Source: Selaginella moellendorffii (lineage: Eukaryota; Plantae; Lycopodiophyta). From it: a stretch of DNA of 64,000 nucleotides. The notes under the pieces are model-generated. The model searched no databases. It had not been told where the DNA came from and was given only the letters and a program-made list of their open reading frames with translations. The stretch is from contig NW_003314295.1 of NCBI RefSeq assembly GCF_000143415.4, forward strand, positions 995,038 through 1,059,037, written 5' to 3'. A program made the position numbers and the translations under genes. This document shows, piece by piece, positions 6,643 to 47,479 of this stretch (within the stretch, counting starts at the first letter, position 1; every line of letters starts with the position of its first letter).

Positions 6643-8289
6643 CTAGTGATCAATGAATTTGCGGTAGAAGTTGGCGAAGCCAAGGAAAACCTGAACGTCC
6701 GACATTGATTGTGGAGGCTCCCATTCGAGAATAGTCTTGACTTTGGCAGGATCCATCGTGATACCCTCAGGAGTGACAATGTACCCAAGGAACTCCACAA
6801 ACTGCTGATCAAAGGAACATTTCTCAAGCTTTGCGTATAGGCTGTGTTCTCGCAACTTCGCTAGCACCTTGCGTACATGTCCGTCATGCTCCTCCTGAGT
6901 TTTTTAGTAGATGAGGATGTCATCGAGGTAGACGATCACCATCTGATCAAGAAACTCCCGAAAGACGTCGTTCGCCATGTGTTGGAAAACTGCTGGAGCA
7001 TTTGTCAAGCCAAATGGCATGACAGTGTACTCGAAGTGGCCATAGCGGGTTTGGAACGCAGTCTTCCATTCATCACCAGGCCGGATCCAGATCAGGTTGT
7101 ATGCTCCACGGAGGTCGATCTTGGTGAAGAAGCGGGCACCGCCGAGGCGTTCCAACAGGTCCGAGATCAGGGGCAGCGGATAACGGTTCCGAACAGTCAC
7201 TTTGTTCAAACCTCGGTAGTCGATGACTAGCCGCAAGCTCCCATCCTTCTTCTTGACAAAGAAGACAGGCGCTCTAGCCAGGGACTGCGAATGCTGAATG
7301 TAGCCCGAGGCAAGGTTCTCATCCACGTACTCTTTGAGGGCCTTAAGCTCAGACGGGGATAACCCGTAGATAGGCCCCCACGGAGGTGACGCTCCTTCCT
7401 GTAAATCAATGGGACAATCATAAGGCCGATGAACAGGCAGTACACTAGCTTTTTTCTTGTCAAACACATCCCCAAAATCATGATACTTCTCAGGAAGACT
7501 GACAGGAGAAACATGCAAAGCAAAAAGAAAAAGAGGTTCTTCATGAAGGAGTTCTTTCATAGTGATTGTGGAGATAGGAGGAGGCGTACGACTAAATGGA
7601 ATGATGAGACGAGGATACGGTCCAGTGTAAGATGGAAGAGAGGAAAAAGAAGAGGGTGAAAACTTTATAGAGTCAGGAATAGAACCCCGATTTGAGTTTA
7701 GGGAACTTTTCCTGATTCGGACTCGATGAACAGCAGGGGAAGCCGTGGGAGAGATGAGCTGTAATTCCTTCCAACAGATCTGAGGCTGATGTAGTTGGAA
7801 CCATGGAAGACCGAGCACCACAGAGGAAGACTTGCTATTGATGATGTTGAAGGCGATATCGGTGACGGTGGACCCGATGTGTACTCGAACTGGCAACGTT
7901 TCCCTAAGTCCAGAAGATGGAGACACAAAATGCCCGCCGATGCCTTCAACCCTTAAATCCCGTATGGTAGGAGAAAGAGGAACGTGATGTCGGGCAGCAA
8001 AGTCCGTGTCCATGAAGCAGGAAGTTGCACCTGAGTCCAGTAACGCCAGAGCCTTGAGTCCTGATTGTCCGGTGAAAGAAAGGAGACATGGGACGCGGAA
8101 GTTGCGGGAATTGGTGGTGGCTTTGATGAAAGGTGGTGAGGAGCTTGATAAAGAAGAAAAGTGATTTTTATTCGGGGAGTCCAAACAAACAGCTCCTACT
8201 CTGTTTGGATAGGGTCGTTTCCCGACTGCAATAGAGGTGGACTTTGAGGCAGAGTGAACTCGAGCAGTCAAGGAGGCTTCTTGGGACAT
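6643..8289 (-). pseudogene. Ty3/gypsy (Tf1/sushi/chromovirus-like) pol: aspartic protease + reverse transcriptase; truncated before RNase H/integrase
   Basis: [10 protein letters not shown] protease motif; RT motifs [50 protein letters not shown]. An in-frame TAA at 6904-6906 splits RT; the sequence ends at a poly-C tract near 6635. Confidence 0.93.
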
Positions 8290-13776: not shown

Positions 13777-15915
13777 TCAGATCCAAGCCCCAACGCCATT
13801 GAGCGGCATTCCCCGCCACCCTAGGATCAAGAACCCCTCCTGGTTCGTCAGCGTATATCCATCCGAGTAGTAGAGCTTGAGAAGAAGGCTGGCCTGGTTG
13901 ATCGCCTTGTGGCTCATGGACACGGCTCGGAAGCCCACGCCCTCCATCCTGGCGTTCCACGCCCGCATTGACTCGTGCCGCTCCACGCGCTCGCTACCCT
14001 CGCACGCGATCATGTTGCGCAGCTTCTGCGCCGCGATGAGCTCCTCGAGTTTCTTCCGCCCGGGGAGCGTCCCAGGCATGTGTAGCGACGCATCGAACGC
14101 GTCAAACACGGCCGAGTAGTAGTGGAGGCAGGCCATGAAGCGGTGCATGAAATCGGGGCTATTGTGATCCGCGTCGTTCTCGGCCATCACCACCAGCCTC
14201 GGCCGCAGCGAGCGCAGCCCCTGCAGGAACTGGTCGAGGTCACGCTTGAGGAACCGGTGGAACTGGCACAGGCTGTTGACGAGCACCGCCTCGCCATCCC
14301 GGAGCTCCACCATCCCGGCGTGGAACTCCTCGAGCTCCACTCTGAGAATGCAGTACTCGAAGGGCACCCCCAGCGATCGGGCGCAGTCGAGAAGCTTGCT
14401 CCCGGCCTCCTGGAGGTCACGCAGCGAGGAGCCAACGGCGGTCATGCGCACGACGGGCGGGCCGCCGGGGCGCATGGCCAGCGACTGGAGGAAGGAGGGC
14501 CACTGCGCGCCATACCAGACCTGGAAGTCGACGACGTGGATGGCGCGCTCGCGGTCGGCGGCCTCGAGCAGGATCTGGTTCATGGTGAGGTGCGTGAACT
14601 TGCCGATGGGAATGTACTCGTAGAAGACCCAAAAGGCCTCGAGCATGTCGCTGCGCGTGGCGCTGCTCAGCTGCTGGAGGCTGTGGTCGGCGATGAGGCC
14701 CTGGAAGTGGGAGGAGCGGGTGTTGCGGCTGAGGCGCGCCACCAGGGCCTCGGTCACGTACGAGGCTAGCCGCTGCATGGGGCTGCCGTGGGGGACGACC
14801 AGCGCGCGGAGCTGGACGAGAATGGCGCGGGCGAGGTCGAGGTTGTCGATGGCCACAGCGCCGGCGCAGCTGAGGAGCATCCGGACGAGGCGGAGCTGCT
14901 GGTCCACGGGCTCGAATTTGGGAAAGTTGTTGCTATGGTGTCGCTGCTGCTGCTGCTGCTGCTGCTGTTGACCAAGGTGGTGGTGGTGATTGCTGTTGTA
15001 ATCTCCTCCTCCTGCCCTGGAAACCCCCCCGCCACCCAATGCCACCATCTCTTGCTTCATGGGTTGGATCACTAGCTGCTGATGTTCTTGGTGATGTTCT
15101 TGGGGGTGGTGGTGACGGTGGTGATGGTAATCGAGTTCTTCCAGCTTTGGGTTGATGAAAGCCCGCTGCTCCGACTGGACGCAGACGCTAGTGGTGGTGG
15201 AGCCCGGGCTGAGCTGCGGAGTCCTTGGGTGAGGGGGAGGAGTCCTAGGATTGAAACACGAACCTTGGGAGACGCTGGACAGCCGGGGGTTTGCCACCGG
15301 CAAGGAAATGCCCTGTTGCGGGACCTGCGCCCGTGCCGAGACTGGTGTCAGGGGTGGTAAAGAGCTTGACGACATCTGTCCCGGGGGACTGGCGGCACTG
15401 CTGCTGCTGCTGTCGATCTCGCCGGCCAGCTCGCCGGCCAGGCGCTCGATCTCCAATTCGCCTGGCGCCCGCTTGGGCAATTGTATCATGCCATGGCCCT
15501 GCTGCGTGAAACCCGCCAGGAGCTCCTGAATCTCCATAGCGTCGTCCTGATCCCTCTCAAAGAACCCACTATCGAAATCACTGCTGTGGTAGTGCTGCTG
15601 CTGCTGCTCGTGGACGTAATCCAGCACCGAAATCGGCGTTGTCTGGAGTCCATTGCCGCCGAACACGTCCCCGAAATCGCAGCACGGGTCGATGTAGAGG
15701 TGGTGGTCCTGCGCCTGCGAATTGATGGATCCCCAATCCTTGGAGTCGAAGATGGATTGCTGCTGCTGTTGCTGCTGCTGCCAGTCGGCGATGGGGTCGG
15801 CGAGGAAGAGATCGCTCTCGATGAACATGGTTGACGCTAGCTCCTCCGTCACTCCACCGCACTCACCTCTCGTCGATCCACCCCCGCCGTAGACCACTGC
15901 TCCTAGAGATCCCAT
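13777..15915 (-). CDS. GRAS-family transcription factor (SCR/RAM1-related), intronless, 712 aa
   Basis: LHRI (LVRMLLSCAGAV..GSPMQRLASY), IHVVD (VHIID), QWPSFLQSLAMRPGGPP, RVERHE, LILGW...GAW; polyQ/H low-complexity N-terminus. Confidence 0.95.
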   Translation of the reverse strand: MGSLGAVVYGGGGSTRGECGGVTEELASTMFIESDLFLADPIADWQQQQQQQQSIFDSKDWGSINSQAQDHHLYIDPCCDFGDVFGGNGLQTTPISVLDYVHEQQQQHYHSSDFDSGFFERDQDDAMEIQELLAGFTQQGHGMIQLPKRAPGELEIERLAGELAGEIDSSSSSAASPPGQMSSSSLPPLTPVSARAQVPQQGISLPVANPRLSSVSQGSCFNPRTPPPHPRTPQLSPGSTTTSVCVQSEQRAFINPKLEELDYHHHRHHHPQEHHQEHQQLVIQPMKQEMVALGGGGVSRAGGGDYNSNHHHHLGQQQQQQQQQRHHSNNFPKFEPVDQQLRLVRMLLSCAGAVAIDNLDLARAILVQLRALVVPHGSPMQRLASYVTEALVARLSRNTRSSHFQGLIADHSLQQLSSATRSDMLEAFWVFYEYIPIGKFTHLTMNQILLEAADRERAIHVVDFQVWYGAQWPSFLQSLAMRPGGPPVVRMTAVGSSLRDLQEAGSKLLDCARSLGVPFEYCILRVELEEFHAGMVELRDGEAVLVNSLCQFHRFLKRDLDQFLQGLRSLRPRLVVMAENDADHNSPDFMHRFMACLHYYSAVFDAFDASLHMPGTLPGRKKLEELIAAQKLRNMIACEGSERVERHESMRAWNARMEGVGFRAVSMSHKAINQASLLLKLYYSDGYTLTNQEGFLILGWRGMPLNGVGAWI

Positions 15916-18502
15916 TGCCGGACGAGGAACAGTGGCACCATCATGTAGAGCCTTCCTCGATCGCGATCATCAAGCGGTGACCTTGGTGGTCGGCGAGATC
16001 ACGACGCTCCTTGCCGGCAAAGTACCCCTTGTTGAACAACACTTGGAAGCCTTCCACTCCTTCCTTCTTTTTCTTCTTCTACTCGTACCCGTGCTGTTGC
16101 TGGCCACCACATTCCAAGGAAGAGAGCGAAGTGAGTAGACAAGTAGAACGGCTCGATCCAATTCCCTGCCAAACAATCGAAAACGTGTAGCCGGGCCACA
16201 CCCAACAGAGAAGGAACACTTCGATCAGCTGACAACTCACAAGGATTGGAGAACAGCGAACTAAAACTTCGCGGAGACAAAGAATTGCGAGTTACCCTCT
16301 TTCACCCTCCCTCTTTCTTCTGGGTATTTGGCTAAATGTTGTGGATAGAGCAGCAGATGGTGGACTGGATCCTGGCCATTACTTACACGGAAGGAACTGG
16401 ACGTGTATGATTTGTCCGTACGGAACTTTCTATGGGTAAGTGTGAGAGTGTGTATGTGTTTGTATTCTTCTCTGGCTCTTGTGTGCACCAGGACAGACAC
16501 AAGCAGCTGATTGATTTACAATAAACTAGCTAGGACCAAAAAAACTTGTTCTTGCTTATCCTCTTGCACACTCCTTTGTTTGTCCCCCTCAATGAGAGCT
16601 GGAGGAGAGAGAGCTTTGGACTTTTTTTCACTCACTGGGGCAGCTAGAAATTTTATGTGTGCAAGCCACCTATAGATTTGGGAGAGGAGGAGAAACGCTC
16701 AAGACCTCTGGACTATGGTGCTCAAGGCAAGGCAAGGCAAGGAAAGAGGAAGGGGATGGTGTTTGGGAGGGCTTAAATGGGGGCAAAGAATGGGATTGAG
16801 ATGAGTGAACAGAGACTTCCACTAACAACAAACAGTGTTCTGTTTCTCCTTCCTGCCCCTTGCTTTGTTTTTGTTCTCATCTATCATCCCAAAGGCCCAC
16901 AGCCCAACATATTAAAGAAGATGGTATAGTATGATTTGTTAAGTCTGTGTTAGTGTAAGTGAGTGAGTGATTGATGGATTGACCTGATTCTGCATAGTGT
17001 GGCGTCTTGGGAGAAAAATCAAAACAAATAGGGGCAATGTGCATGCATGTCATTGACAGTGAAAGTAAAAGAAGACAATAGGGAAGTGGATAAGCATTGC
17101 AAGAGGGGATGGTGTGGCCAACAACAGGAGGAAAAGAAGGGGTTGGATATATCAACAAGTGTTGGTTGAGTCAACAACAAGGGCTTTTTTTGGTGGGGGC
17201 AGGGTACAAGATTAATTGTTGAAGTGGGCAGAATTCTACTACTTTTCCATTTAATTCATCTCTAACAATTAAAAAAAACACACAGTGGACTCTAAAAACT
17301 ATTCATTGACCAATCAACATGGGATGGATTGGGATTCAAAGGTAGAATCATGACACGTTGACATCGGACGGTCCTGTTTGAAAATAGAATATTCCGCCCA
17401 TCGGACGGTGGTAGGCCACCCGGCACGTGCCGCGCGCGAGCGATGGGCGTTTGATTGGGCGGGTCGGATACGCCCTCACGCCCTGCTTTTCGTGTAGATT
17501 GGGGGGGGGAGGGGGGGCGCCGGGGGATTTTTTGTTTCTTTCTTTGCTGTGGAATCGGCAACGAGTGATATTGTGCCATGGACAGAAAAATGACGGAAAA
17601 AAAGATTAAACTAGATTGATTTCCTATTTTTCAACGTGGGGCCTCTCTTGTGGTTTTGAGTATGGGTGCTCCAATTTGTTTTTTCCTTCTTTCATTTCTT
17701 TTGGCTGTAAAGCAATTCCACAACCCCATCTCTCTTTCTTGATTTGAAGAGCTGCTTGTGTGTATGGAGTGGACATCGTAGGAGCTCGCCACCTCGCATC
17801 CCATAAAGCTCATAAAATTTTGCTCGAATTTGATGCACCTAAAGGTTAAATTGTACACGAAAGGTACTGTGTGGGAGATCTCCTTATTATAATGTTTTTT
17901 TAGCTTTATGAAATCAAAGAACTCAGATAGATAGATATGTTTTAAGTCCCGTTTATACTAAAATTTGCTAATGTTTTCTGATAAAAAGCAAAAAGATTCA
18001 TCCAAAACCAAATCCACAGAGAAGTTCCCTTTTCCATTTTTTTTTATTTTCTTTCCCTCTGAGAGCGACTTTGTTATGGATGACGCACCACCAAAGCACG
18101 CGAAGATGTATATATTTTTCGCCTTGTATATATAATTTTTTATATTTTTCATGTCATAACATTAGAGCTCGTCTCAGCTCATTCATCAGTGTGTTGTCCT
18201 TGTCTCGTCCATTTATATTGTGTGATCTTCATCGAATAGACGAGGGACGCGGCAACAACTCGGATAATAAAAAGCAATATTAACAAGTACCTCTCTTTAA
18301 TTTTCTCGTGAGAAACATCCATAATCACGCAATCTTTCAAGAGCATCCCTTCTCTCTTTTATAAATCTCCACAATCATCTCAATTTCCGGAATCTTTCTC
18401 TCAGTGGTCTGCAAGTAGATTGATTAAGCTGGTTAGTGGAACAACACAAGAATCATATGCTTACCAGTGCCAAGTGAAAGGAAAACAAAAACTGTAGCGG
18501 AT

Positions 18503-20273
18503 TTACTTGAGTAGCATGCCGATTTGATCCTTTAGACTGCTCTTCTTCTTTGGTTTTGGCTGGATGGACCTTGTTTCCTCGATTGACTGTGGTGCCTCGA
18601 CTGCCACTCTCACCGGTGCTTCCATCACATCCCTTGGAACTATTGCTGGCCTTGGAACTACTTCTGGCTCGGGCCTTTGCAAGTTAGCTTCCATCGCTTG
18701 AGGGGAAGCCGGAGCCTTCTTTGGGACGTAGCCTCCAAAGAGCATCCCGAGCATCTCATCCTCGAGAGTGTCAGTTGACACGAGCCTCGCAGCACCTGAA
18801 ACAGTTTGCTCCTCTTGAGCTCGATCGCTTCCCGCGAACCCGGCCTCATCCCTTCCAACAGTGCTGACTCTTTCATGCTCGTAGCTTTCCCTGGTCGGTG
18901 CTTTACTGCTCGAGCTTCCCGACTCATTCTCTGCTGCAGTAGCAGCTGACTTGCTTTTCCACCCGCTCAAAGCAAACATGGAATCGTTCAGCTTCGCTTT
19001 TTTCTTTGCTGGCTGGGTGGAAGTTCCGTTCACGTTGCCGGCGGCTAATGGCTTGGGGCTGTCCTGTTTGTCTTCCACATTGTTCGTGAGGATAGCCTCA
19101 GGGCTGTCCTCGTGGTCAAGATTCTTTTAAAAAGGAAAGAGGCCACAGTTATCCGAGAGAAAACGAGAAAAAAAGAGAGAGTAGAATACCTGATGAGCTA
19201 TGCACATAAGTTCGTCCAGTGTCCGGTCTGTAGTCTCCTCGTCCTCCACGACTTTTTTTAGTTTCCGCTTGCTTTTCTTGGTGGCCTGGTCCTTTCCCAC
19301 CTCGGGGGCCGGAGCTCGCTTGCAAAAAGCCTCGAAAGCTCCCTTCATGTCCACCCCACCGCTGGTATTTTCTGGCAAAGCCTCGTCACTCTCGGCTTTT
19401 CTCGATCTCCGCTGCGCTGCTTTAACAGCACCTGCACCTGGAGCTTCGTCAGCTGCTTTGTTCGCGGGTTTGTCTTTGCCTTGGTCGCTATCATCTCCCC
19501 TGTTCCTGGTTTGACGAGCGGTTGCTTTCTTAGCAGGCTTCACTGGCTCCTCGTCATCTATAACTTCTTCCTCCGCGTCGTCAACTTTTTGCTTGCCTTT
19601 GGAACTCTTGGCTTTCCTGGCAGCGGGAGCTTTTCTCCCGGCGGAAGTCTGGGGATCGTCGCCATCCTCCTCTTCCACCTTTTGCCTCTTTGATGCTCGC
19701 GCCTTCTTCGGCTTTTCGACGGCGGCAGCAGTCATCCATGCCGGCAGAGCTCGCCGTGCCCCCGGATCCGGAGTTAGCTTCACTGGATTTCTCACCCATT
19801 CGATCGTAGGTAGTGGCTCTAGATCCTCCTCTTCCTCCTCTTTGATCTCGCTAGACGAAGCACCGTTTTTCAAGCAATGGAGCTGCACGGAAAAGAGTCT
19901 AGAACACTTGAAAAAAGAAGAAGAAACTTACGTGATTTGCGCGGTGAAGTAGCAAAGCTATGACGTGCTTACACATTCCCCTTCCAGCTGGACAGGAGCA
20001 GCGATACGTGGGTTGCTTGGTTGCATCTGATGGATCGATGCTAATGCTCACATCGTAGCTATCCCCTGGACCGGAGCCTAGAAGCGACAGGAAAAGCGAT
20101 CGATCACATCACCAGCGGAAAAAAAAAACCTCACCTTCACAGACAGCCGACGCCTTCTCGCAATCCTCCCCTACAAATTCCACCTCGTGGAGCTTCTTGG
20201 CCTTGATCAGCTCTTTCCCGCGCTTGAAAGCCGCATCGTTCACGAGCGCCTTGACGGAGGCCTCGTCTTCCAT
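18503..20273 (-). CDS. SWIM zinc-finger protein with Ku-binding-like motif; exons 20273-20135, 20077-19932, 19882-19190, 19123-18503 (~532 aa)
   Basis: GT-AG introns with consistent phases; exon 2 encodes CSCPAGRGMCKHVIALLL (SWIM CxC..CxH); exon 3 encodes RRALPAWM; long disordered charged tail ending KKKSSLKDQIGMLLK. Confidence 0.8.
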
Positions 20274-20434
20274 CGCCCCAGAGCTTCTTCCCTTCTGCCC
20301 TAATGTAATCGTCAAGGGTTTATAAGAACAACATCCAACGGTCACGGTCGGAGGGGAATATTCCGCTAGATCTTGCTTAAATATTTAGGTAGCGAGGAAG
20401 GGCTTTTTTGTGGATCCAAGAGGGCGGCGAGACA

Positions 20435-21334
20435 ATGCAGGAGATCAAGAATGTGTCCCTGCTCGTCGTGATCTCCACCACCGTGCTCTTCCTCGTCGCG
20501 TTTGGCCTGGCGGTCGGAGCCGAATCGAAGCGCAGCACGGTATGTAGTGTGAAATTCTAGCCTTTCGGCTCCAAATCCTTGCCTAGAATGGGGAATTCTA
20601 GCCTCCCCGATGCCGCATTCTTCGCTGGCACCGCGAAATATCGCCAGAGATCCAGGAAATCGCTGATGATTCTTGGCTGTCGATCGATTTCCAGGCGGCC
20701 GTGGGACACGATGACACTGGGACGCTCACCTATTGCGCCTACGGCAAGGATATCTCCACCGGGCTGGGAGCCGGCGCCTTCTTGTTCGTGCTGCTCGCTC
20801 AGGGGATTATAATGGGCGCTACCAAGTGTCTGTGCTGTGGAGCGCCTCTCAGCGACGGCAAACCAAGAACTCTAGCGATCTTCTTTTTCATATTCTCATG
20901 GTAAGCCATCTTTGTCTACTTTGTCCTTGCTTGGTTTTCTTACGGGAGCTCTCTTTTTTCCCAGGATTTGCTTCTGCATTGCGCAGATCTGCCTTGCCGG
21001 AGCCTCTGCTCGCAACTCCATCCACACGAATGGATTCGCGACTCCAAACGAGCCTCTGGATTGCGTGGAGCTCCGGAGGGGGGTGTTTGGCGCCGCCGCC
21101 GCGTTCATCTTCTTCACCATGCTGCTCAGCGAGGCGTACTACGTTTTCATCGTCAAGGCCAGAGAGGGCTCGTGGCAAGCTTTCGATGTCCGGGACTCGT
21201 TCAACTTCCGAGACTCTTTCAAGTTCAGTCGCAACTTCAACCTCCGCGACTCCTTCAATTTCCGGGGTGGTGGATCCGTCGGCATGACTCCAACGGGAAC
21301 TTCAGCCGGGCCTGGAACTGGAACTGCAAGCTAG
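20435..21334 (+). CDS. DUF1218 / MODIFYING WALL LIGNIN-like membrane protein (3 exons)
   Basis: LVAFGLAVGAESKRS, YCAYGKDISTGLG, TKCLCCG, AQICLAG..RN..H, C..LRRGVFGAAAAF. Confidence 0.88.
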
Positions 21335-25682: not shown

Positions 25683-27539
25683 TTATATAGTGACAGCACC
25701 GACTCTACTCTCCAGTTCGTCAGTATCTCCAACCTCTTCGTTCGGGCCGTCGTTCTCATCAATTTCTTCTGCTTCGTCTTCTTCATCACCCAGCTCGTTA
25801 TCTTCCAAGGGAGCTAGCACTGAAGTTCCGACTCCGCTTGCAAGCACTGACCTGACAGAGGCCAATCCCTTCGCAGAGATATGGTTGGACTCCAGAATGA
25901 GTAGCTTAAAGCGCGGCTTGGTTGTCACGGCCTTGGCAGCAGCAATGGCACCATCACTTCCAACGTCATTTAGCGTGAAGTCCAGCTCCTCTAAGTCATC
26001 GTGGCCTTGTCTCAGAGCGTTCGAAACAAGAATCACACCTTTGTCTTTCAGTTCGTTCTCTGCTAGGCTCAGCTTCTTCAGTGCGGCCTTCTTCTCCAAG
26101 AAGCGCACGAGATGCGGTGCACAGCTCGTACTTATGTCGTTGTTTCCCAGGTCCAAAACGCTTAGCTTTGGAGCCGTGGTCTCTAGAGCCTCCAGCACTG
26201 CTTGCACCCCGGCATTTTGCAATCCCAAATCACTTAAGTAGAGCTCCTCGAGTAAAGGCTGGGTCCTAAAAGCTTTTCCGAGAGCAAAACCTCCCTCCTC
26301 CCCAAAGATGTTGTCTCTCAAGTCGAGTTTCTTCAAGCTCGAACAAGCCTGGAGAGCCTCCGCCAATGCTACTGCTCCCTTGGTACCCACTCTACTGGAG
26401 GAGAGCTTGAAGTCCTCCAAGGCAGTAGCCTGACGGACGAGGCTGGCAATCCTTTCAGCCCCGAGATCACCACTCATGTTGTTGTGGAAGTGAAGAGTCC
26501 GGAGCTTGCTGCCTGAAACAAGCTCCACGATTGCCTTTGCAGCATCCGATGAAATCCCGTTGTTCTCAAAGCGAAGGTCCTCGAGATGCTTCTGCGACTT
26601 CAGCAATGAACCAAACGCCCGGACACCTTTCTCCCCGAGAGCGTTGTTGGAGAGATAGAGAAACCTCAAGTCGCTGCCTTCGAGAGCCGCCGAGAAGATA
26701 GACATCACGTCCAAAGCCTCGGGCTCTGGTCTTCCAGCCACGATATCCGAGAGATCAGCCCCGACCAGCCTCTCCTTACACCTCGAGAGCAGTCTTCCAG
26801 CAAACTCCGCAGCTTCCTTCGTGAATGCCCGATTGCTCAAACGAACTTTCGTGAAACCATGATCAGGATCAACCAGCGGCTGGAACACCTCCTCGGCTTT
26901 TTCTCGATCGAGCACGTCCCTGCTTCCACCGGAGATATCGAAGAGCTGGGGATCAACTTTAGTAGCTAGCGGGGGAGTGGAAGCAGAATCTCCAGTATCT
27001 TCCATCACCTCTTTCACGGCAGTCGTCACGGAAGAGGCATCTTTTTCTTGCCCAGTACCATCGATGGCGGTTTGAGCTTCCTCGGCCTTTTCCTTCTCTT
27101 TCTCTGGAAGCTTACCCGTCTTGAGAACCTCGAGCATCATCCGGCTCGCTTGCTTGGCGTAGATCCTCACGGCAGAGCTGCCATTGTTCCTGCCGCTCCC
27201 AGAAACCCCGGATACTTCTTGATCCTCCCTCTCTCCCTCCTCGAAGGCGCGCTCCTCCACCAATGCCGCTACCCGGGCGGCCTCTTGCGGCTCCACCGGC
27301 TGATAGAATGTCGACAGAGACTTGAGATTCTCGGCCATGCGATTCACGACATGCGATCTTGTGCGCGCGCCCGGCGGCCATAGCCGTATCGAGACCTCGC
27401 TCGCCGCTCCTCCGGCTGCATTTTCTTGGAAATAAATCTCTGGCAAGAAGAATCGATCATCAAACTTACGCGATGGCTTGCTGCGCAGATCGCTGGAGGA
27501 CGCTTCCTTGGATGCCGGCACAACCGCCGGAGAAACCAT
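25683..27539 (-). CDS. RANGAP: Ran GTPase-activating protein (WPP domain, LRRs, acidic tail)
   Basis: SIRLWPP..RTR..VVNRM, DLSDIVAGRPE.EAL, LSNNALGEKGVRAF, FHNNMSGD.GA, acidic C-terminus. First ATG at 27539; a short in-frame intron near 27425-27469 is possible. Confidence 0.95.
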   Translation of the reverse strand: MVSPAVVPASKEASSSDLRSKPSRKFDDRFFLPEIYFQENAAGGAASEVSIRLWPPGARTRSHVVNRMAENLKSLSTFYQPVEPQEAARVAALVEERAFEEGEREDQEVSGVSGSGRNNGSSAVRIYAKQASRMMLEVLKTGKLPEKEKEKAEEAQTAIDGTGQEKDASSVTTAVKEVMEDTGDSASTPPLATKVDPQLFDISGGSRDVLDREKAEEVFQPLVDPDHGFTKVRLSNRAFTKEAAEFAGRLLSRCKERLVGADLSDIVAGRPEPEALDVMSIFSAALEGSDLRFLYLSNNALGEKGVRAFGSLLKSQKHLEDLRFENNGISSDAAKAIVELVSGSKLRTLHFHNNMSGDLGAERIASLVRQATALEDFKLSSSRVGTKGAVALAEALQACSSLKKLDLRDNIFGEEGGFALGKAFRTQPLLEELYLSDLGLQNAGVQAVLEALETTAPKLSVLDLGNNDISTSCAPHLVRFLEKKAALKKLSLAENELKDKGVILVSNALRQGHDDLEELDFTLNDVGSDGAIAAAKAVTTKPRFKLLILESNHISAKGLASVRSVLASGVGTSVLAPLEDNELGDEEDEAEEIDENDGPNEEVGDTDELESRVGAVTI

Positions 27540-27626
27540 CGCCAAGGCCCTAGAAGGAGAAAGCGCTCCCGCCGATAGAAATCTTAGGGCTCTTGGTGCA
27601 ATTTTAGGGTTCTCGGGTCAAAAATT

Positions 27627-28111: not shown

Positions 28112-30053
28112 ATGGCGACGCTGGAGGATTCGCTCGCCGCGCAGATCCGCTGCTGCCGCCGCGGAGCTGGCTTAAACCAAGGCAAGTTGCTGCATTCTCG
28201 GATTTCCACCACAGGCCTTGATCGCCAGACTTACATTGGCAATCTTCTCGTCCAGATGTACGGGCGGCTGGGCAGCACCCGCGACGCGCGGACGGCATTC
28301 GATGCGATCTACCGGCGCAACGTTTTCTCCTGGAATCTCTTGATCGGCGCCTACTGCAGCAATTGCCGGCATGGCGAGGCGCTTGATCTCTTCCAGGCGA
28401 TGATCCGCGAGGCGGCAGTGGATCCCAATCACATCACCTACATCGGGGTCGTGAGCGCGTGCTCCTGGCTGGGTGATCTCGCGCGGGGTCGGGAGATCCA
28501 CGCGAGGATCGTCGCGGATGGGCTCGGCGATTCTCATGTGTTCTTGGAGAATTCTCTCATCACCATGTATGGGAGGTGTGGGAGCTTGGAGGAGGCCAGG
28601 GGGATTTTCCAGAGGATGGCGAAGAAGGATACCGGGTCTTGGAATGCCCTCATGGCCGCTTGCGTGGAGAATGGGAGAGAGGCCGAGGCTGTGGAGCTTT
28701 ACAGGGAGATGGACGTAGCAGCGGATGGAATCACTTTCACCACTGTTCTTGGCGCTTGCTCCAGATCGATCGCCGATGGACGAGACATCCACAGGGACAT
28801 CTGGGCGACGACGTTTCGATCGGATGCGTCGGTGACTACCGCGCTGGTGACGATGTATGGGAGGAATGGGAGCTTGGCCGAGGCAAGGGAGGTGTTTGAG
28901 AGGATCCGGGACAAGAATGTGGTGGCCTGGACGTCCATGATCGTGGCTTGCGTCCACAATGGAGCGTATGTGGAGGCGCTCACGCTCAAGAGACGGATGG
29001 ATCTGGAAGGGGTGAAAGCAAACTCCGTCACCTTTGCGTCCGCGCTTGATGCTTGCTCCGGGGCTGGCTCGCTGGCCGATGGAAGACTTCTCGAAAGTAG
29101 TTTAAGCGCTCAAGGACTCGAGCGTGATCTTGTGCTCGGGACCGCTCTCATCGACATGTATGGGAAGTGCGGGAAGCCGGACGATGCAGCGGCGGTGTTC
29201 GCGAATCTCAAGTTCAAGAGTTTGATCGCGTGGAACGCGATGATCGGGGCGTGGTCTCACAATGTCCGCGGGAGAGAGGCGATGCACTTGTTCTGTAGGA
29301 TGGACCAGGAAGGGATTCAGAAGGACAGGATCACTTACCTCAACATCCTCGAAGCTCTTGGTCATGGATCGTTTCTACGCGAAGCGAAGGTCATCCACGC
29401 TCGGATAGTTGCCTCGGGTCTAGACTCCGAGGTAGCCATCGGCAACGCGATCGTCAACATGTATGGCAAGGCCGGCAGCCTCGCCGCTGCGAAGCTCGCG
29501 TTTGATGGACTCAAGCTGCGGGACGTGGTTTCATGGACGAGTATCATCGCAGCTTACTCGCGACAGGGGAGGCACAGAGAAGTTCCGGCGCTGTCTTGCG
29601 AAATGCATCTAGAAGGAGTGAAAGCAAACGGGATTACGTTCGTGCACATCCTGCACGCCTTCAGCCATTCGGGACTCGTCAGAGAAGGCTGCCTTTGCTT
29701 TGCCTCGATGATGGTGGATCACGGACTTCATGCGACTCGTGAGCTCTGCGGCTGCATGGTCGATCTGCTGGGGAAAGCGGGATGGATTCTGGAGGCCCAG
29801 GACATGATCAACGCTATGCCTTTCCAGCCTGACGCTGTTTCCTGGACGAGCTTGCTCAACGCTTGTGTCATCCACTCGGAAGTTCCGGATCGAGCTCGAC
29901 ACGCCGCAGCCGGTGCATACAAGCTGGAAGACAAGGACTTTGGTGCTCCTTATGTCGCGCTTTCCAATCTCTACTTCACTCAGTCTTCATCTCAAGGTAC
30001 TTCTCTATCGTGTTCTTTTCTCTCTTTAACTTCTTCTTGCAGGATCATCGTGA
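28112..30053 (+). CDS. PLS-class pentatricopeptide repeat protein with E domain (organellar RNA editing factor)
   Basis: P/L/S repeats (NSLITMYGRCGSLEEAR..F, ..TF..VL.ACS) and E domain (CMVDLLGKAG...MPFQPDAVSW.SLL.AC..H, YVALSNLY). Probably ends via a short intron (29997-30042) at TGA 30051-30053; the unspliced ORF runs to 30262. Confidence 0.92.
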
Positions 30054-30093
30054 AATTCGATAGAGGCTACGCTATCCAGTCTCTACTTCACTC

Positions 30094-30255
30094 AGCCACG
30101 GATTCTCCACTTAGACCTCAGGTAAGAGTGATCCTGGGTCTCTCTCTCCTCAGTGGTCACGCTTGGGAAGTTCGATGCTCTATCACGAATGGGGCCTCCG
30201 GTTCTTCTCTCTTTCACGGGAATGGGAGAAATCCTTGGCTGGGACAAGAGGTAAC
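30094..30255 (+). pseudogene. Duplicated, deleted fragment of the FAD synthetase 5' exons
   Basis: Near-identical to 32369-32645 (GGATTCTCCAC..AGACCTCAGGTAAGAG; CAGTGGTC.CGCTTGGGAAGTTCGATG; TCACGAATGGGGCCTCCGGTT...GGGACAAGAGGTAAC). Confidence 0.85.
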
Positions 30256-31318
30256 GCGTTGAAATTTTTCTGGTTCTTACACAAGCGGGGCCATGACCAA
30301 GAGAAAGAAAAAGTTTCATGGTTTCATGACCAGGAGATGGAAAAGAAAAGAAAAAACGTACCAGAGGAATATAAATACAATGAGGGGTCTCTGTGTGGTT
30401 CTCACGACTTCTCAATTTAAGCACCAAATCTCTTTTAAGGAAAGGGATAAGGGATAACAAATTAGAGAGAGTGATCGGGGTGAGCCCCGATTTGCTCCAA
30501 ATCCCCACGTAAAAACAAACATATGCTACTTAATTTTAATTCTTGTGGGAGTGCCTCCTTAAGGAAGCGTTCCAAAAATTTTGATATGCCGCTATTATGT
30601 GGCCAGCACACGGTATTCTTTAGTAAAAGGCGAAAGAATAGTTCGCTTTGCGCTGACCACACGGCCTGTGTAATTTGCTTCACTTCTTCGATCGCTTTAT
30701 ATACTCATCCATAGGCTTGAAGCTAAGCTCCGGCATGTGGGATAACTCCACAAGCCCTAGGTCATCGTACACCCCTAGAAGCATATTCTCCGAATGGTTT
30801 TTCAAACATAATAGTGTTTTTTGTTTTTTTTTTTTTTAAAGAGGAGTCCCGAAGATCTTCAACGGATGAAGATTTTCAACGATTCACAATAATGGAGATC
30901 AAAATAGTCAGAATCTTTGGCCTGGAGAAGAGCCTCCTTGAACTGGGGACCCAGCCAGTCTTTCACAGGATGCTTTCTTTCGTCACACTGGCCTCTTGGT
31001 CCTCGAGATCTAGGAAGTAATTTCTTTTTCCTGCAAAAGGAAACAAGAAGAGTTGAATGCTGTACCACGCTGAATCTGTCATTGATGATATACATCAAGC
31101 TCGAAGGACCTCAGCGTGAAAGGCAATTAAGCAGCCACCGAAAGGCCACCTTGGCTTCCATGCCGCCTTCACTGGGAGCTTGGATCACTGTCACAACCTT
31201 GCACCCAGATGTTCTTCTGGCAGCTCACAGCGCGGAACCACTGCCATCGCTGGGAGCAGCATTCATCAGCTGGAGCACCTCCCATGAGTTCTATGGGAGG
31301 TTTTTTGTGTAAAAACAC

Positions 31319-33627: not shown

Positions 33628-34530
33628 ATGCAAACGTTGGCTGGCCCCCAAAATCTGAGCTCCTATTGGCCTCTCCATCTCCTTATCTTTTCCTGTGAAC
33701 TCCGCCAAGTTAGTACCAGTAGCAGCAAAGTTGCGGGCTTACCATTCTCAAGGTTTGGAGCTCAGGAGCTCCCCCTTTCTCCTCAAGAGATGTCGACCAG
33801 TATCTCCTCCAGCCAGTGTCATTCAATGCTGGATCCCAGGCAGAGGTACGCAGTCGACTTCTATGGTGGCTCCTCCAGATTTGCTCGCAGTAGCCACAGC
33901 AGCCGGGTGTGTAGCTATAACCGGCCTTGTTATTCCTCCATAGCTTCATCCTCCACCCGGCTTGCAGCCGCTTCGTCCTTGCGAGCAACAGCGGTCGACC
34001 AGGAAGAGCTCTCGCTGGATTCGTCCGGTGTCTCGTACCAAGTGCTGAAACAAAGATTGGAAGCCGGTGAGTGGGAAGCAGCAGACGAGGAAACTCGACG
34101 ACTTCTCTACGTTTTAGCCGGTGAAGCTGCCGCCAAGCGGAAGTGGGTCTACTTTTCCGAAGCACAGTTCATCCCGGCCAGGGACCTTCAAACGCTCGAC
34201 AGTCTCTGGAGGCAGTACAGTGGCAACAAGTTTGGATACAGCGTCCAGCGGCGGATCTGGAAGAGCGTCGCGTCGAACTGGAGCTTGTTCTTCCGGAAAG
34301 TCGGGTGGACGAGGCCGCTGGACGAGAAGAACGACGCTTACAGGAAGTTCCCTGTCGAGTTCATGTGGGACGTTGCAAAGCCGACTCCGGATGGTCACTT
34401 GCCCCTGACGAACTGCTTGCGGGGAACGCAGCTACTTCAGGCGATTCTCTTGCATCCTGCATTTGATGAGATCGAGAAGCAGGAAGGAATGACCAGCAAT
34501 CTCACCGGTTCTTCTTCCACTCTCTTGTGA
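33628..34530 (+). CDS. GUN4: Tetrapyrrole-binding protein GUN4 (start may be ATG 33790)
   Basis: L.AG.WE.AD.ETRRLL..LAGEAA.KR.WVYFSE..FIP..DL.TLD.LW..YS..KFGYSVQRRIW, P.GHLPLTN.LRGTQLL..IL.HPAF. Confidence 0.95.
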   Translation: MQTLAGPQNLSSYWPLHLLIFSCELRQVSTSSSKVAGLPFSRFGAQELPLSPQEMSTSISSSQCHSMLDPRQRYAVDFYGGSSRFARSSHSSRVCSYNRPCYSSIASSSTRLAAASSLRATAVDQEELSLDSSGVSYQVLKQRLEAGEWEAADEETRRLLYVLAGEAAAKRKWVYFSEAQFIPARDLQTLDSLWRQYSGNKFGYSVQRRIWKSVASNWSLFFRKVGWTRPLDEKNDAYRKFPVEFMWDVAKPTPDGHLPLTNCLRGTQLLQAILLHPAFDEIEKQEGMTSNLTGSSSTLL

Positions 34531-44291: not shown

Positions 44292-46331
44292 ATGGAGAGG
44301 CAAGAATGTATCAGGCAATTGGAGTCATGTACCACACTTTCTCGTGCATCCCAGCTGAGATCGCTAGTGGAGCGCACCAGCCATTCGAGAGATACGTTCG
44401 TGTGGAACAAACTCATCGAAGTTTTCGGGAGGTGCGGCGGCATCTCCCAGGCTCGAGAGGTCTTTGATTCTCTGAGGCAATGGAAGAATTGCTACTCGTG
44501 GGTTTTCATGATCTCTGCTTACTCCAGGAACGGACTTGTGGAGGAGGCCAGGCGGACTTTCGATGAGATGCCGGAGAAGAATCTGGTCTCCTGGAACACC
44601 ATCGCTGTGACTTATGCCCAAAACGGGCATCTTGCGGATGCGAAGCGGATCTTTGATTCCATGCCGGCTAGGAATATGGTATCTTTTTCTTCGATGCTGA
44701 CCGCGTTTGCTCAAAACGGGCAGCTGGAAGCCGCCCGGAGTATCTTTGACAGGATGCCCACAAAGAATCTGATCTCCCAGACGGCGATGTTATCGGCGTA
44801 TGCCCAAAACGGGTATCTCGAGCATGCAAAGCAAGTATTTGACTCAATGCCGCAGCACAATCTTGTCTCTTGGAACTCAATCCTTACCGCATTTGCACAG
44901 AACGGAAATCTAATCGATGCTCAAGATACATTCAATCATATGCCCGAGCAAGACTTGATTTCCTGGAATGCAATGCTAACAGCAATCGCCCAAAAGGGAA
45001 AAATGGAGGATGCCAAGAGATTCTTTGACGAGATGGCTTGCCGCAACCTTGTATCTTGGAACTCCTTGATCTCGTCCTTCTCCCAAAACGGACACGTGGC
45101 AGAGGCCAAGAGGCTGTACGAGAATATGCCAGAGAGGGACCAAGTCTGTGCCACCGCAATGCTCACGGCATATTCCCAGCTTGGGAATCTCCGGGATGCT
45201 GAGGCAGTGTTTAGCGAGATGCAGTTCCAAAACTCCATCTCCGCCACCGCAATGCTGAATGCGTATGCCCAAAACGGGTATATCCAGGAGGCCAGAAATG
45301 TATTCGACCAGATCCCCCAAAAGAACGTCATTACCTGGAACTCTATGCTCACAGCCTATACAGAAAATGAGAATCTTACAGAGGCAGAATGCTTGTTTGA
45401 AAAAATGCCGGAGTTGGATCTTGTTTCATGGACTACCATGCTATCGGCATATGCGCAAGAAGGGCATATCCAGAAAGCTAAGCGTATATTCGATAAAATG
45501 CCCGAGAAGGACAGGGTTGCATGGACAGCAATGCTGAGGACATATGCCCTGTGTGGGAATCTGGAGTATGCTAGGTGGATTTTAGAGAATATGCCTGAGT
45601 GGGACACGGTAGCCTTGACTACCATGCTAGCTGCATATGCCCAAAGTGATCACTTAGAACAAGCAGAATGTTTGTACACAAGGGTTGACGAAAAGAATCC
45701 GGTGCTCCAAACTGCAATGCTAAGTGCGTACAATATCAATGGAAACTTGATCGAGGCAAAGAGTGTGTTTGATCAAATGGGTCAGAGGAGTATGGTCTCG
45801 TGGAACTCGATGCTCTCGGCATATGCCCAGCACGGGAATGTCGAAACTGCGAAACGAATCTTTGATGAGGTACACGAGAGGAGTGCCGTGACATGGATTG
45901 CTATGATGTCGGCATATGCGCAGAATGGGCATTTCCGAGAAGCCCTGTTCTTGTTCCGCGAGATGAATAGCTTCCAGATCTTCCTCGACGATGTTTGCTT
46001 CATCTGTGCGTTGCACGCTTGCAATCACGTCGGCAAGACGAACGCCGCCAAGTCGTGCTTCGTTTCGATGAGCTTCGACTTTGGTGTCTCTCCGACGAAG
46101 CGCCACTACTGCTGCTTCGCGGATCTCATCGCCCGCGCGGGCCACCTCCGCGACGCCGAAGATCTCGTGCTAAACATGCCATTCGTGCCGGATAAGTCCG
46201 ACTGGAGATCTCTCCTGGGCGCTTCCAAGTCTCACAGTAGCGCCAAGCTTGGGGCTCGAGCGGCGCATCGAGTGCTTGATATGGATCCCTGCGACGCGCC
46301 CTCTTACGTCCTCCTTTCGACCATAAGCTAG
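44292..46331 (+). CDS. PPR protein, long tandem array of 31-aa S-type repeats + E domain, 679 aa
   Basis: Repeated N.VSW..ML.AYAQ.G....A...FD.MP; E domain HYCC..DL.ARAG.L..AE.L...MPF.PD...W.SLLGA; no DYW domain. Confidence 0.95.
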   Translation: MERQECIRQLESCTTLSRASQLRSLVERTSHSRDTFVWNKLIEVFGRCGGISQAREVFDSLRQWKNCYSWVFMISAYSRNGLVEEARRTFDEMPEKNLVSWNTIAVTYAQNGHLADAKRIFDSMPARNMVSFSSMLTAFAQNGQLEAARSIFDRMPTKNLISQTAMLSAYAQNGYLEHAKQVFDSMPQHNLVSWNSILTAFAQNGNLIDAQDTFNHMPEQDLISWNAMLTAIAQKGKMEDAKRFFDEMACRNLVSWNSLISSFSQNGHVAEAKRLYENMPERDQVCATAMLTAYSQLGNLRDAEAVFSEMQFQNSISATAMLNAYAQNGYIQEARNVFDQIPQKNVITWNSMLTAYTENENLTEAECLFEKMPELDLVSWTTMLSAYAQEGHIQKAKRIFDKMPEKDRVAWTAMLRTYALCGNLEYARWILENMPEWDTVALTTMLAAYAQSDHLEQAECLYTRVDEKNPVLQTAMLSAYNINGNLIEAKSVFDQMGQRSMVSWNSMLSAYAQHGNVETAKRIFDEVHERSAVTWIAMMSAYAQNGHFREALFLFREMNSFQIFLDDVCFICALHACNHVGKTNAAKSCFVSMSFDFGVSPTKRHYCCFADLIARAGHLRDAEDLVLNMPFVPDKSDWRSLLGASKSHSSAKLGARAAHRVLDMDPCDAPSYVLLSTIS

Positions 46332-46356
46332 AAACTTCGCCAAAGCACAATGCTTC

Positions 46357-46432
46357 AATCCAATTCGATGCAAGCGCAGATCCAAAACGATCCAGCATTC
46401 TATGCTCAAGAATTGTAGGATCTCGCCCATGA
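46357..46432 (+). pseudogene. Duplicated 5' start fragment of the downstream PPR gene
   Basis: AATCCAATT.GATGCAAGCGCAG.TCCAAAACGATCCAGCAT.CTATGCTC...GGATCTCGCCCATG matches ~47469-47553, with a 9-nt deletion. Confidence 0.85.
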
Positions 46433-47479
46433 GACACGACCATTTTAGTCTTCGGAAGCAGTGGATTGAGGAAGAACAAAAGCAACTGTTGAGCTCAGTC
46501 AATGGTCTCTACAAAGTTGGCGGTAGAGTTTCTTACGTAGTCTTCCGTGGGCACAGACTCGCAATTATTGGCAAATGGTGTCTACCTCTCCACTATGATA
46601 CGCAAGAGGATGAGGTTCTGGAGCTTGTCACCATTTCGAAGAGCCTTGATGAATCTGAGGTCTGTTGCTGCTGGTGTCTCTAGCCTACACGACGCTATCT
46701 GATGCAAAAGAACAGGTTCGATGCTATGGCTTGAAGAAAGGGAACGTAGACGAGTTTCTCTTGCTCAGCCCGCTTTGGAAGTTGAAAGCGGGCAAGGCCC
46801 CAACACTGTGATCCTAGCGTTCGAGATTGGGGAGAGACACGAGGAACCGGGGTGGCGCAAACTTGGTGGAGTTCTAGGTTTTTTGCCGCAAATCCTTGAA
46901 GTGGTTCTTTTCACTCGCCAAGGGACGCGGAAATGCAATGACCCTGACTTTGAGCTGTTATTCTGGCGTAAGTGTTGCCATCTTTGCCTCACTTGTTTGT
47001 GCACCATCAATTGACATAAAAATTATTTTTATCATTATTATTTTTAATGATAAGATAAAATAAGCATTCTTGTAGAGGACCACAGCTTCGTTTCCTCAGA
47101 AATATTGCCTGCTACTTTCACCGTGATCCAGTTGGAGAAACTGAAACAAAGTGTAGCTTTCGTACCCCAGTAGATTCTCTCTTTTGCTTACTTCACATCT
47201 TTCTTTTGTTTGAATAATCCAGTGCTTAAAGTATCCTGATAAGAGCGATTCATTGCTTCGAGAGGTCAAAGTCACGCTAATGGTAGAAGATGGATGAACC
47301 ACAGATGGTAGATATGTCCAATTGCCGAGAATGCTTAATATCATACAAGCGATGGATCGATTGACAAGGGTACGGGAATGCCAATCTTTCATCTTTAGAG
47401 AGAATGGAGAAGATTTTATTTTGTAGCACTATATAATTCCAAAGATGATCACCAAAGAACTGTCTTCCAATCCAATTTG

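What the first reader, a model, noticed from the sequence alone, without database searches (positions are those of the whole stretch)
18503..20273. Candidate plant CYREN/MRI-like NHEJ adaptor fused to a SWIM zinc finger
Seen: the spliced 4-exon protein has an N-terminal SWIM finger (CSC..CKHVIALL), then RRALPAWM (19733-19756), a helical TLDELMCIA segment, a DEMLGMLFGG segment and a basic terminal KKKSSLKDQIGMLLK, set in a disordered chain. Established: R-x-x-P-x-W is the APLF-type Ku80-binding motif of APLF, WRN and CYREN/MRI. CYREN is a disordered protein with this motif, a middle helix (NEAEIVDVAL) and a C-terminal hydrophobic-aromatic XLF-like motif. Inference: this is a Ku-binding DNA-repair scaffold with CYREN-like motif order plus a SWIM domain, an architecture I do not know to be described in plants.
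Basis: partly seen in the sequence, partly recalled or inferred. Interest (0 to 1): 0.78.

Follow-up and report, generated by a model that had tools for sequence, protein, structure and literature searches.

The report
Spikemoss SWIM protein, Ku-binding-like motif
A real, expressed and already catalogued spikemoss (Selaginella moellendorffii) gene encodes a zinc-finger head and a long floppy tail carrying a near-perfect copy of the peptide that animal DNA-repair helpers use to grip the Ku protein, but no relatives were found, so Ku binding remains untested.

Summary
The 4-exon minus-strand gene (18503-20273) gives a 532-aa protein identical to Selaginella moellendorffii SELMODRAFT_417371. Spliced RNA contigs from four studies show all three coding introns and join the SWIM exons to exon 3. 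Residues 1-100 are a canonical SWIM domain. The rest is predicted disordered, basic/acidic and rich in nuclear-localisation-type clusters.

RRALPAWM fills every contact position described for animal APLF-type Ku-binding motifs (Arg -5, hydrophobic -3, Pro -2, Trp 0, Met +1). A match this good arises in about 1 of 100,000 shuffles of this protein, roughly 0.2-0.5 per proteome.

The "CYREN-like" reading is otherwise weak. There is no sequence similarity to CYREN. The C-terminus lacks the conserved Phe of the XLF-like motif. The "middle helix" is generic. Every homologue search found only the second haplotype copy, so motif conservation cannot be assessed. The tail is weakly constrained (dN/dS about 0.6).

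New here: the shared 186-bp promoter is identical between haplotypes and holds the window's only full MSA (G2/M) element.

The scan met this gene before on the other haplotype (s1-421032) and reached the same verdict. I put Ku binding at about 0.25.

The parts
20135..20273 (-). Coding exon 1 (Met1 to first base of codon 47), the N-terminal helices and strands of the SWIM domain
   Evidence: Intron 20078-20134 (57 nt) is skipped in RNA contigs of 4 runs.
19932..20077 (-). Coding exon 2, the SWIM core. Pfam SWIM aa 55-92 = 19941-20054; CSC at 19992-20000; CKH at 19965-19973.
   Evidence: The Atlas model of the other haplotype copy (P0001) aligns over residues 1-110 to SWIM families at TM 0.62-0.69. 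Weak match to the ZSWIM8 SWIM domain in PDB 9rwz.
19190..19882 (-). Coding exon 3 (aa 96-326): acidic linker, KBM-like motif, basic/acidic disordered stretch, predicted helices at 274-284, 295-308 and 317-326
   Evidence: Contigs join it to exon 2. No Pfam family. An exhaustive phmmer search found only the other haplotype.
19733..19756 (-). RRALPAWM (aa 138-145), an APLF-type Ku-binding-motif look-alike
   Evidence: It shares 6 of 15 residues with the APLF KBM peptide translated from Grundy et al.'s primer. Shuffle statistics. Unchanged in the other haplotype and in all RNA contigs.
19679..19714 (-). KPKKARASKRQK (aa 152-163), a basic cluster. With RR138-139 it fits a bipartite nuclear-localisation pattern.
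   Evidence: The NLS consensus is from my own knowledge.
18503..19123 (-). Coding exon 4 (aa 327-532 plus stop), a disordered tail with a second KKKAK cluster, the acidic-hydrophobic segment and the C-terminal helix
   Evidence: The exon 3-4 joint is seen in 4 runs with a 27-nt side.
18728..18796 (-). It has the layout of a TND-interacting motif: short helix, acidic S/T-rich linker, then FxG[F/Y].
   Evidence: Motif description from PMC9987994. Resemblance only.
18506..18550 (-). KKKSSLKDQIGMLLK, a basic patch followed by the most confidently predicted helix of the protein (aa 523-531, pLDDT 73-79). It has no aromatic residue.
18123..18502 (-). 3'UTR with a spliced 56-nt intron (18409-18464)
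   Evidence: records 1, 12 and 17
20274..20442 (.). Bidirectional promoter shared with the + strand DUF1218 gene. Transcript 5' ends lie at 20283-20294. A TATA-like TTATAAA sits at 20319-20325 (minus strand). The full MSA consensus TCCAACGGTCA is at 20334-20344.
   Evidence: MSA consensus from PMC5405339.

Best explanation
This is a Selaginella-restricted nuclear adaptor protein. A canonical N-terminal SWIM zinc-finger domain (aa 1-100) is the folded anchoring module, for DNA or for a partner protein. It carries a roughly 430-residue intrinsically disordered tail of alternating basic and acidic stretches. The tail has nuclear-localisation-type clusters and a few short hydrophobic islands that act as docking motifs.

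The gene is probably transcribed in proliferating cells around G2/M, through a MYB3R-type MSA element at about -45.

On this reading the partner of RRALPAWM is not established. The likeness to the animal Ku-binding motif may be convergent use of an Arg/Leu-Pro-x-Trp-Met docking peptide for another partner, part of a bipartite NLS, or chance.

Shown: gene structure, expression, the SWIM domain, predicted disorder, the motif match, the promoter element and its identity between haplotypes. Inferred: nuclear location, adaptor role, cell-cycle timing.
For: - The gene model is confirmed by spliced RNA contigs from 4 studies and equals the annotated protein.
- SWIM: Pfam above its cut-off. The fold matches SWIM families over residues 1-110 at TM 0.62-0.69 (on the Atlas model of the other haplotype copy). 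ZSWIM8's SWIM is the only PDB sequence hit.
- The tail has pLDDT below 50 almost throughout. Short helices are predicted at 274-284, 295-308, 317-326 and 523-531.
- There are five K[KR]x[KR] clusters, and RR-X12-KPKKAR flanks the motif.
- Constraint differs by part: dN/dS 0.18 for the SWIM domain against 0.63 for the tail.
- The only full MSA consensus in 64 kb lies about 45 bp upstream of the transcript starts (0.33 expected per window).
- The 186-bp promoter alignment has no difference between haplotypes, against 3.2% divergence across the locus and 10 differences in 172 intron bases.
- No relatives of the tail exist in 1.84 billion representative proteins.
Against: - The motif fills all five Ku80-contact positions, and such a match is rare (1 in 100,000 shuffles). 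"Chance or another partner" therefore needs some luck.
- No localisation, interaction or cell-cycle data exist.
- The MSA element may serve the divergent DUF1218 gene instead.
- A single MSA site is weaker evidence than the clusters usual in G2/M genes.
- The haplotype comparison rests on only 22 substitutions.
Confidence: 0.5

Rival explanations
1. A true Ku-binding NHEJ adaptor or regulator. RRALPAWM docks in the alpha4/alpha5 groove of the Selaginella Ku80 vWA domain, as the A-KBMs of APLF, WRN and MRI do. The SWIM domain and the other tail motifs bring a second activity or partner to Ku-bound DNA ends. G2/M-timed expression would make it a functional analogue, not a homologue, of CYREN.
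For: - The motif has Arg -5, Leu -3, Pro -2, Trp 0 and Met +1. These correspond to WRN R13, C15, W18 and M19, which contact Ku80 D106/D109, I112 and Q119 (PMC13377182).
- Met after Trp is the residue that raises MRI affinity more than 30-fold.
- It shares 6 of 15 residues with the APLF peptide.
- Two basic residues lie upstream, the context is disordered and the downstream stretch is Ala-rich and helix-prone.
- The extended pattern appears in 1 of 100,000 shuffles.
- There is precedent for the motif fused to other domains: a sea-urchin PNKP-like protein.
- Plants have no known accessory NHEJ factor other than PAXX.
- The MSA promoter fits cell-cycle control.
Against: - No orthologue was found in any search, so motif conservation is unknown.
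- Roughly 0.2-0.5 chance matches of this quality are expected per proteome (my estimate and typical amino-acid composition).
- The A-KBM groove is not universal: yeast Ku does not stimulate WRN. Its state in plant Ku80 is unknown.
- The minimal motif is a poor predictor in human proteins.
- The tail is weakly constrained (dN/dS 0.63), and one run shows an in-frame 6-nt deletion.
- No SOG1-type CTT-N7-AAG site lies near the promoter.
- The C-terminus lacks the Phe of XLF-like motifs.
Confidence: 0.25
2. A young, fast-evolving lineage-specific gene. An old SWIM domain became attached to a low-complexity tail that has no specific docking function. All tail "motifs" are chance features of a weakly constrained sequence.
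For: - No homologue beyond the two haplotypes in any search.
- Tail dN/dS is 0.63, with 14 of 22 coding differences non-synonymous.
- An in-frame indel is tolerated.
- No Pfam family in exons 3 or 4.
- RefSeq names for the two copies disagree (IWS1 homolog and ABCF4). I attribute this to low-complexity similarity.
Against: - The gene is expressed and correctly spliced in runs from at least 4 studies.
- The reading frame is intact in both haplotypes.
- The promoter is perfectly conserved and has TATA and MSA elements.
- The hydrophobic islands are exactly the segments that AlphaFold predicts as helices.
- The motif match is much better than the minimal consensus.
Confidence: 0.17
3. The Selaginella orthologue of Shu2/SWS1 (ZSWIM7). 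On this reading the SWIM domain binds RAD51 paralogues to promote homologous recombination, and the protein has gained a lineage-specific tail.
For: - The SWIM domain reads C-x-C...C-x-H-x-x-A (CKHVIA). It includes the alanine described as invariant in the Shu2/SWS1 family (Godin 2015; paper not held, so recalled from my own knowledge).
- The SWIM domain is the only folded module.
Against: - CKHxxA also occurs in many bacterial and ZSWIM SWIM domains.
- The only PDB sequence hit is ZSWIM8, not ZSWIM7.
- The Atlas neighbours are bacterial SWIM and SNF2-associated families.
- A query of the first 165 residues against proteins of 91-289 aa found nothing at E up to 10.
- No partner gene is known.
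Confidence: 0.05

Closest known systems
APLF-type Ku-binding motif (A-KBM) of APLF, WRN and MRI/CYREN
   Same: The peptide [KR]-R-x-L-P-x-W-M lies in a disordered region with an upstream basic patch and a helix-prone continuation. All residues that contact Ku80 in the solved complexes are present.
   Different: It occurs in a plant, where no A-KBM has been described. There is no evidence of conservation or binding. The host protein is unrelated to APLF, WRN or MRI.
CYREN/MRI (157-aa vertebrate NHEJ modulator)
   Same: It is largely disordered and has an A-KBM-like peptide towards the N-terminal side. Hydrophobic helical islands lie in the middle, and a basic patch plus hydrophobic helix sits at the extreme C-terminus.
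   Different: It is 532 aa with a folded SWIM head. No sequence similarity was found. The C-terminal SLKDQIGMLLK lacks the conserved Phe of MRI's VLKYVREIFFS. No counterpart of the beta-strand-plus-helix multimerisation domain could be shown.
SWIM zinc-finger proteins (Pfam PF04434): bacterial SWIM/SNF2-associated proteins, ZSWIM8, Shu2/SWS1
   Same: It has a full SWIM domain with an N-terminal helical hairpin, a beta-sheet, CxC...CxH and a long helix. The CKHxxA signature is present.
   Different: There is no SNF2, kinase, MULE/FAR1 or cullin-adaptor module. The SWIM domain is followed only by a disordered tail, and no close SWIM relative was detected.
MSA-controlled G2/M genes of plants (MYB3R targets such as B-type cyclins and KNOLLE)
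   Same: A perfect (T/C)C(T/C)AACGG(T/C)(T/C)A element lies close upstream of the transcription start.
   Different: There is only a single element, in a bidirectional promoter. No expression time course is available.

Membership tests
SWIM zinc finger (PF04434) | Profile match above the Pfam gathering score | tested here: met
   27.2 bits against 19.6, aa 55-92
SWIM zinc finger (PF04434) | CxC-Xn-CxH zinc ligands and the SWIM fold | tested here: met
   C73-S-C75, C82-K-H84. The Atlas model of P0001 aligns to SWIM families at TM 0.62-0.69 over residues 1-110. My own AlphaFold models were of low confidence.
APLF-type Ku-binding motif (A-KBM) | Core R-x-x-P-x-W with a hydrophobic residue at -3 and M/L/F at +1, preceded by basic residues | tested here: met
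   R138-R139-A-L141-P142-A-W144-M145. Contact roles from PMC13377182 and 10.64898/2026.07.22.740027.
APLF-type Ku-binding motif (A-KBM) | Lies in an intrinsically disordered segment | tested here: met
   pLDDT below 50 for residues 102-159. Atlas mean pLDDT 0.44 for the other haplotype copy, P0001.
APLF-type Ku-binding motif (A-KBM) | Motif conserved among orthologues | tested here: inconclusive
   It is unchanged between the two haplotypes, but these are 97% identical. No orthologue was found.
APLF-type Ku-binding motif (A-KBM) | Trp-dependent binding to the Ku80 vWA groove, and a host Ku80 that keeps that groove | not testable with these tools
CYREN/MRI | Detectable sequence homology to MRI | tested here: not met
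   phmmer with exon 3 over 1.84 billion representatives gave only the other haplotype and one spurious hit. PDB search with the motif peptide was blank.
CYREN/MRI | C-terminal XLF-like motif: basic patch followed by a conserved Phe at the extreme C-terminus | tested here: not met
   The C-terminus KKKSSLKDQIGMLLK has the basic patch but no aromatic residue. The definition is from PMC4831024. The MRI peptide VLKYVREIFFS was translated from its primer.
CYREN/MRI | Central multimerisation domain (beta-strand plus helix, MRI residues 49-81) | tested here: inconclusive
   Helices are predicted at 274-326, but at low confidence and with no similarity to MRI.
Shu2/SWS1 (ZSWIM7) | SWIM with CxC...CxHxxA, and closest kinship to SWS1 proteins | tested here: inconclusive
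   CKHVIA is present. The only PDB sequence hit is ZSWIM8, and no small SWIM relatives were found. The family definition is recalled, because the paper is not held.
MULE/FAR1 transposase-derived SWIM proteins | MULE or FAR1 DNA-binding/transposase domains N-terminal to the SWIM domain | tested here: not met
   SWIM is the only Pfam family and it sits at the N-terminus.
MSA (M-phase-specific activator) promoter element | (T/C)C(T/C)AACGG(T/C)(T/C)A close to the transcription start | tested here: met
   TCCAACGGTCA at 20334-20344 is the only hit in the window. The consensus is from PMC5405339. MYB3R binding and G2/M expression were not tested.

The most novel reading that the evidence does not exclude
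Land plants, or at least lycophytes, have an APLF-type Ku80-docking system. This SWIM protein would be its first known client: a cell-cycle-timed adaptor that brings a SWIM module to Ku-bound DNA ends. It would be functionally analogous to CYREN or APLF but of independent origin.
Probability: 0.25. Interest if true: 0.7.

Novelty: new variant of a known kind. Interest (0 to 1): 0.4.

Why it matters
Beyond the core factors Ku70/80, LIG4 and XRCC4, the only plant end-joining factor reported so far is PAXX (Khan and Ochi preprint). How Ku recruits helpers in plants is open. That question bears on T-DNA integration and on genome-editing outcomes.

A plant protein using the animal A-KBM docking mode would mean the Ku80 vWA groove is an ancient recruitment platform. 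It would also give a simple regular-expression handle for finding further plant Ku clients.

If the motif does not bind Ku, this is an ordinary lineage-specific SWIM protein of unknown role.

Tried and rejected
**Homologue searches, all blank beyond the second haplotype**
- Exhaustive phmmer of exon 3 against 1.84 billion representatives. The one extra hit, P0002, is a Cys-rich repeat protein at E 7e-4 and is spurious.
- Word-index searches with the full protein, with residues 1-160, and with residues 1-165 as a short stand-alone query at E up to 10.
- Atlas feature search of the tail.
- JGI metagenome scan.
- PDB search with the 36-aa motif peptide.
- tblastn for paralogues in the window.

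**Structure**
- Both single-sequence AlphaFold models were too poor (pLDDT 42-44) to justify fold search, so I ran none.

**Literature**
- No paper names the gene or its accessions.
- No paper combines a Ku-binding motif with SWIM.
- Godin 2015, Martin 2006 and Shirodkar 2013 are not held.

**Ideas rejected**
- A MULE-derived SWIM, considered because a large Mutator-like element lies just before the window (s1-398779). The protein has no MULE or FAR1 domain, and the SWIM domain is N-terminal.
- Motif scans found no PIP box, APIM, KEN box or D-box.
- No SOG1-type CTT-N7-AAG site lies within 2 kb of the promoter.

**Could not obtain**
- A plant Ku80 sequence from any tool. The groove residues were therefore not checked.

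Full report
**Observation.** The region was read on both strands. A four-exon model was built on the minus strand: 20273-20135, 20077-19932, 19882-19190 and 19123-18503. All introns are GT..AG. The coding sequence is 1599 nt and the protein 532 aa. The protein is letter-for-letter P0003, annotated in NCBI and UniProt as the hypothetical, SWIM-type domain-containing protein SELMODRAFT_417371 of Selaginella moellendorffii (XP_002977542.1, D8S206). The gene is therefore real and already catalogued, and no paper mentions it.

**Transcripts.** Twenty public runs hold the stretch. Contigs from four runs of four studies were laid on 18000-20600. They skip 20077-20133 (57 nt), 19883-19931 (49 nt) and 19124-19189 (66 nt), each with CT..AC on the plus strand. 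They also skip a further 56-nt intron in the 3'UTR (18409-18464). These contigs are therefore spliced RNA.
- Single contigs run from exon 3 through exon 2 into exon 1 (X1 record 4, X5 record 15).
- The exon 3-4 joint is seen in all four runs, but with only 27 nt on the shorter side, just under the tool's 31-nt rule. The contigs appear to break there because two allelic variants differ at 19224-19256.
- Transcripts span about 18123 to 20283-20294.

**The protein.**
- Pfam finds only SWIM (aa 55-92, 27.2 bits against a cut-off of 19.6).
- The ESM Atlas holds the other haplotype copy (P0001). Its model aligns over residues 1-110 to SWIM-only and SNF2-associated SWIM families at TM 0.62-0.69.
- The only PDB sequence match is the SWIM domain of ZSWIM8 (E 0.012, residues 11-97).
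- The zinc ligands C73/C75 and C82/H84 are present.
- No MULE or FAR1 domain is present, so this is not a transposase remnant, despite the Mutator-like element noted just upstream of the window.
- From residue 102 onward AlphaFold gives pLDDT below 50 almost everywhere. The extreme C-terminus, 523-531, is the best-scored part of the whole model.
- The tail alternates basic and acidic stretches and has five K[KR]x[KR] clusters.

**The motif.** RRALPAWM lies at 19733-19756.
- The literature defines the A-KBM core as R-x-x-P-x-W, with a conserved Pro and Trp after a basic patch (PMC4831024).
- The 2026 Ku-WRN structure assigns roles. Arg13 packs against Ku80 D106/D109. Cys15 and Met19 pack against I112. 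Trp18 lies near Q119 (PMC13377182).
- A 2026 preprint shows that Met after the Trp is the common residue in MRI orthologues and in APLF, and raises affinity more than 30-fold.
- The Selaginella peptide has Arg at -5, Leu at -3, Pro at -2, Trp at 0 and Met at +1. A further Arg lies upstream, and an Ala-rich stretch follows where MRI forms its induced helix.
- Against the APLF peptide translated from Grundy et al.'s cloning primer, it shares 6 of 15 residues, all at the functional positions.

**Chance.** Results from 200,000 shuffles of this protein:

| Pattern | Shuffles with a match |
|---|---|
| RxxPxW | 1.2% |
| RxLPxW | 0.07% |
| [KR]RxLPxW[ML] | 0.001% |

- Scaled to a plant proteome of ordinary composition, I estimate 0.2-0.5 chance matches of the extended kind. 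A scan that reads the whole genome could meet one by luck.
- The minimal motif is a poor predictor. Grundy et al.'s Supplementary Data 1 runs to 19 parts of human RxxPxW entries, about 22 in the part I read, so roughly 400 by extrapolation. [quoted passage not shown]

**The CYREN comparison.**
- No sequence similarity to MRI, or to anything else, was detected.
- XLF-like motifs are defined by a basic patch followed by a conserved Phe at the C-terminus. MRI's ends in FFS. The Selaginella C-terminus has the basic patch and a hydrophobic helix (MLL) but no aromatic residue.
- MRI's central multimerisation domain is a beta-strand plus a helix. The Selaginella helices show no specific likeness to it.
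- "CYREN-like" can therefore only mean a loose functional analogy.

**Relatives.** Every search returned only the two haplotype copies:
- exhaustive phmmer of exon 3 over 1.84 billion representatives;
- word-index searches of the full protein, of residues 1-160, and of residues 1-165 as a short query;
- an Atlas feature search of the tail;
- a metagenome scan;
- tblastn within the window.

Conservation of the motif, which is the key test, could not be made. Lycophyte proteomes other than S. moellendorffii may simply be missing from these libraries.

**Haplotypes.** The other copy (P0001, SELMODRAFT_415181, locus L001) is 96.8% identical over 12.5 kb.
- The coding sequence carries 14 non-synonymous and 8 synonymous differences. 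dN/dS is 0.48 overall, 0.18 in residues 1-100 and 0.63 in the tail.
- One RNA run has an in-frame 6-nt deletion in exon 4.
- The named motifs are unchanged, but at 97% identity that carries little weight.

**Promoter.**
- The full consensus (T/C)C(T/C)AACGG(T/C)(T/C)A (PMC5405339) occurs once in the 64-kb window, at 20334-20344. The expected number is 0.33.
- It lies about 45 bp upstream of the transcript 5' ends, with a TTATAAA box at about -30.
- The 186 bp between this gene and the divergent DUF1218 gene show no difference between haplotypes. The locus overall is 3.2% diverged, and the introns have 10 differences in 172 bases.
- This suggests a constrained, possibly G2/M-regulated bidirectional promoter. 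Which of the two genes it serves is unknown.
- No SOG1-type CTT-N7-AAG site is nearby (consensus from my own knowledge).

**Other readings of the tail.**
- RR138-139, twelve residues, then KPKKAR fits a classical bipartite nuclear-localisation signal (my own knowledge). That could account for the basic residues but not for L-P-x-W-M.
This has the layout reviewed for TND-interacting motifs: a short hydrophobic helix, an acidic S/T/G-rich linker of 8-16 residues, and an FxGF-type end (PMC9987994). This is a resemblance only.

**Verdict.**
- The Ku-binding idea is a specific, cheap-to-test hypothesis resting on one very good short motif in one species. I put it at about 0.25.
- The most likely description is a Selaginella-restricted nuclear SWIM adaptor with a disordered, motif-bearing tail and probable proliferation-linked expression.
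- The scan reached the same conclusion earlier on the other haplotype.

Noticed in passing
window 20274-20442: The bidirectional promoter between the SWIM gene and the + strand DUF1218 gene is 100% identical between the two haplotypes, although the locus is 3.2% diverged. It holds the window's only full MSA consensus (20334-20344) and a TATA-like box (20319-20325).
   Followed up: partly
window 18728-18796 (minus strand, aa 436-458): AARLV-STDTLEDEMLGML-FGGY has the helix, acidic linker and FxGF layout of TFIIS-N-terminal-domain-interacting motifs.
   Followed up: partly
window 19679-19756 (minus strand, aa 138-163): RR, then 12 residues, then KPKKARASKRQK fits a bipartite nuclear-localisation pattern that overlaps the Ku-binding-like motif.
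   Followed up: no
window 18653-18658: One RNA run (X9) carries an in-frame 6-nt deletion in exon 4. Several other allelic differences are seen between studies.
   Followed up: no
window 18409-18464: A 56-nt GT..AG intron in the 3'UTR is spliced in all four runs.
   Followed up: no
window 6904-8289, 13777-15915, 25683-27545, 28112-30262, 33628-34530, 44292-49258, 49305-50135: The neighbours are ordinary plant genes: a retrotransposon protease/reverse-transcriptase ORF, a GRAS gene, a RanGAP-like WPP-LRR gene, three PPR genes, GUN4 and PP2C. In the homologous locus L001 (the other haplotype), PPP4R2 and fasciclin genes lie between the DUF1218 gene and the WPP-LRR (RanGAP-like) gene.
   Followed up: partly
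P0001 / P0003 database names: RefSeq names the two haplotype copies differently: ABC transporter F family member 4 and protein IWS1 homolog. The disagreement suggests to me that both names come from low-complexity similarity, so neither should be trusted.
   Followed up: no
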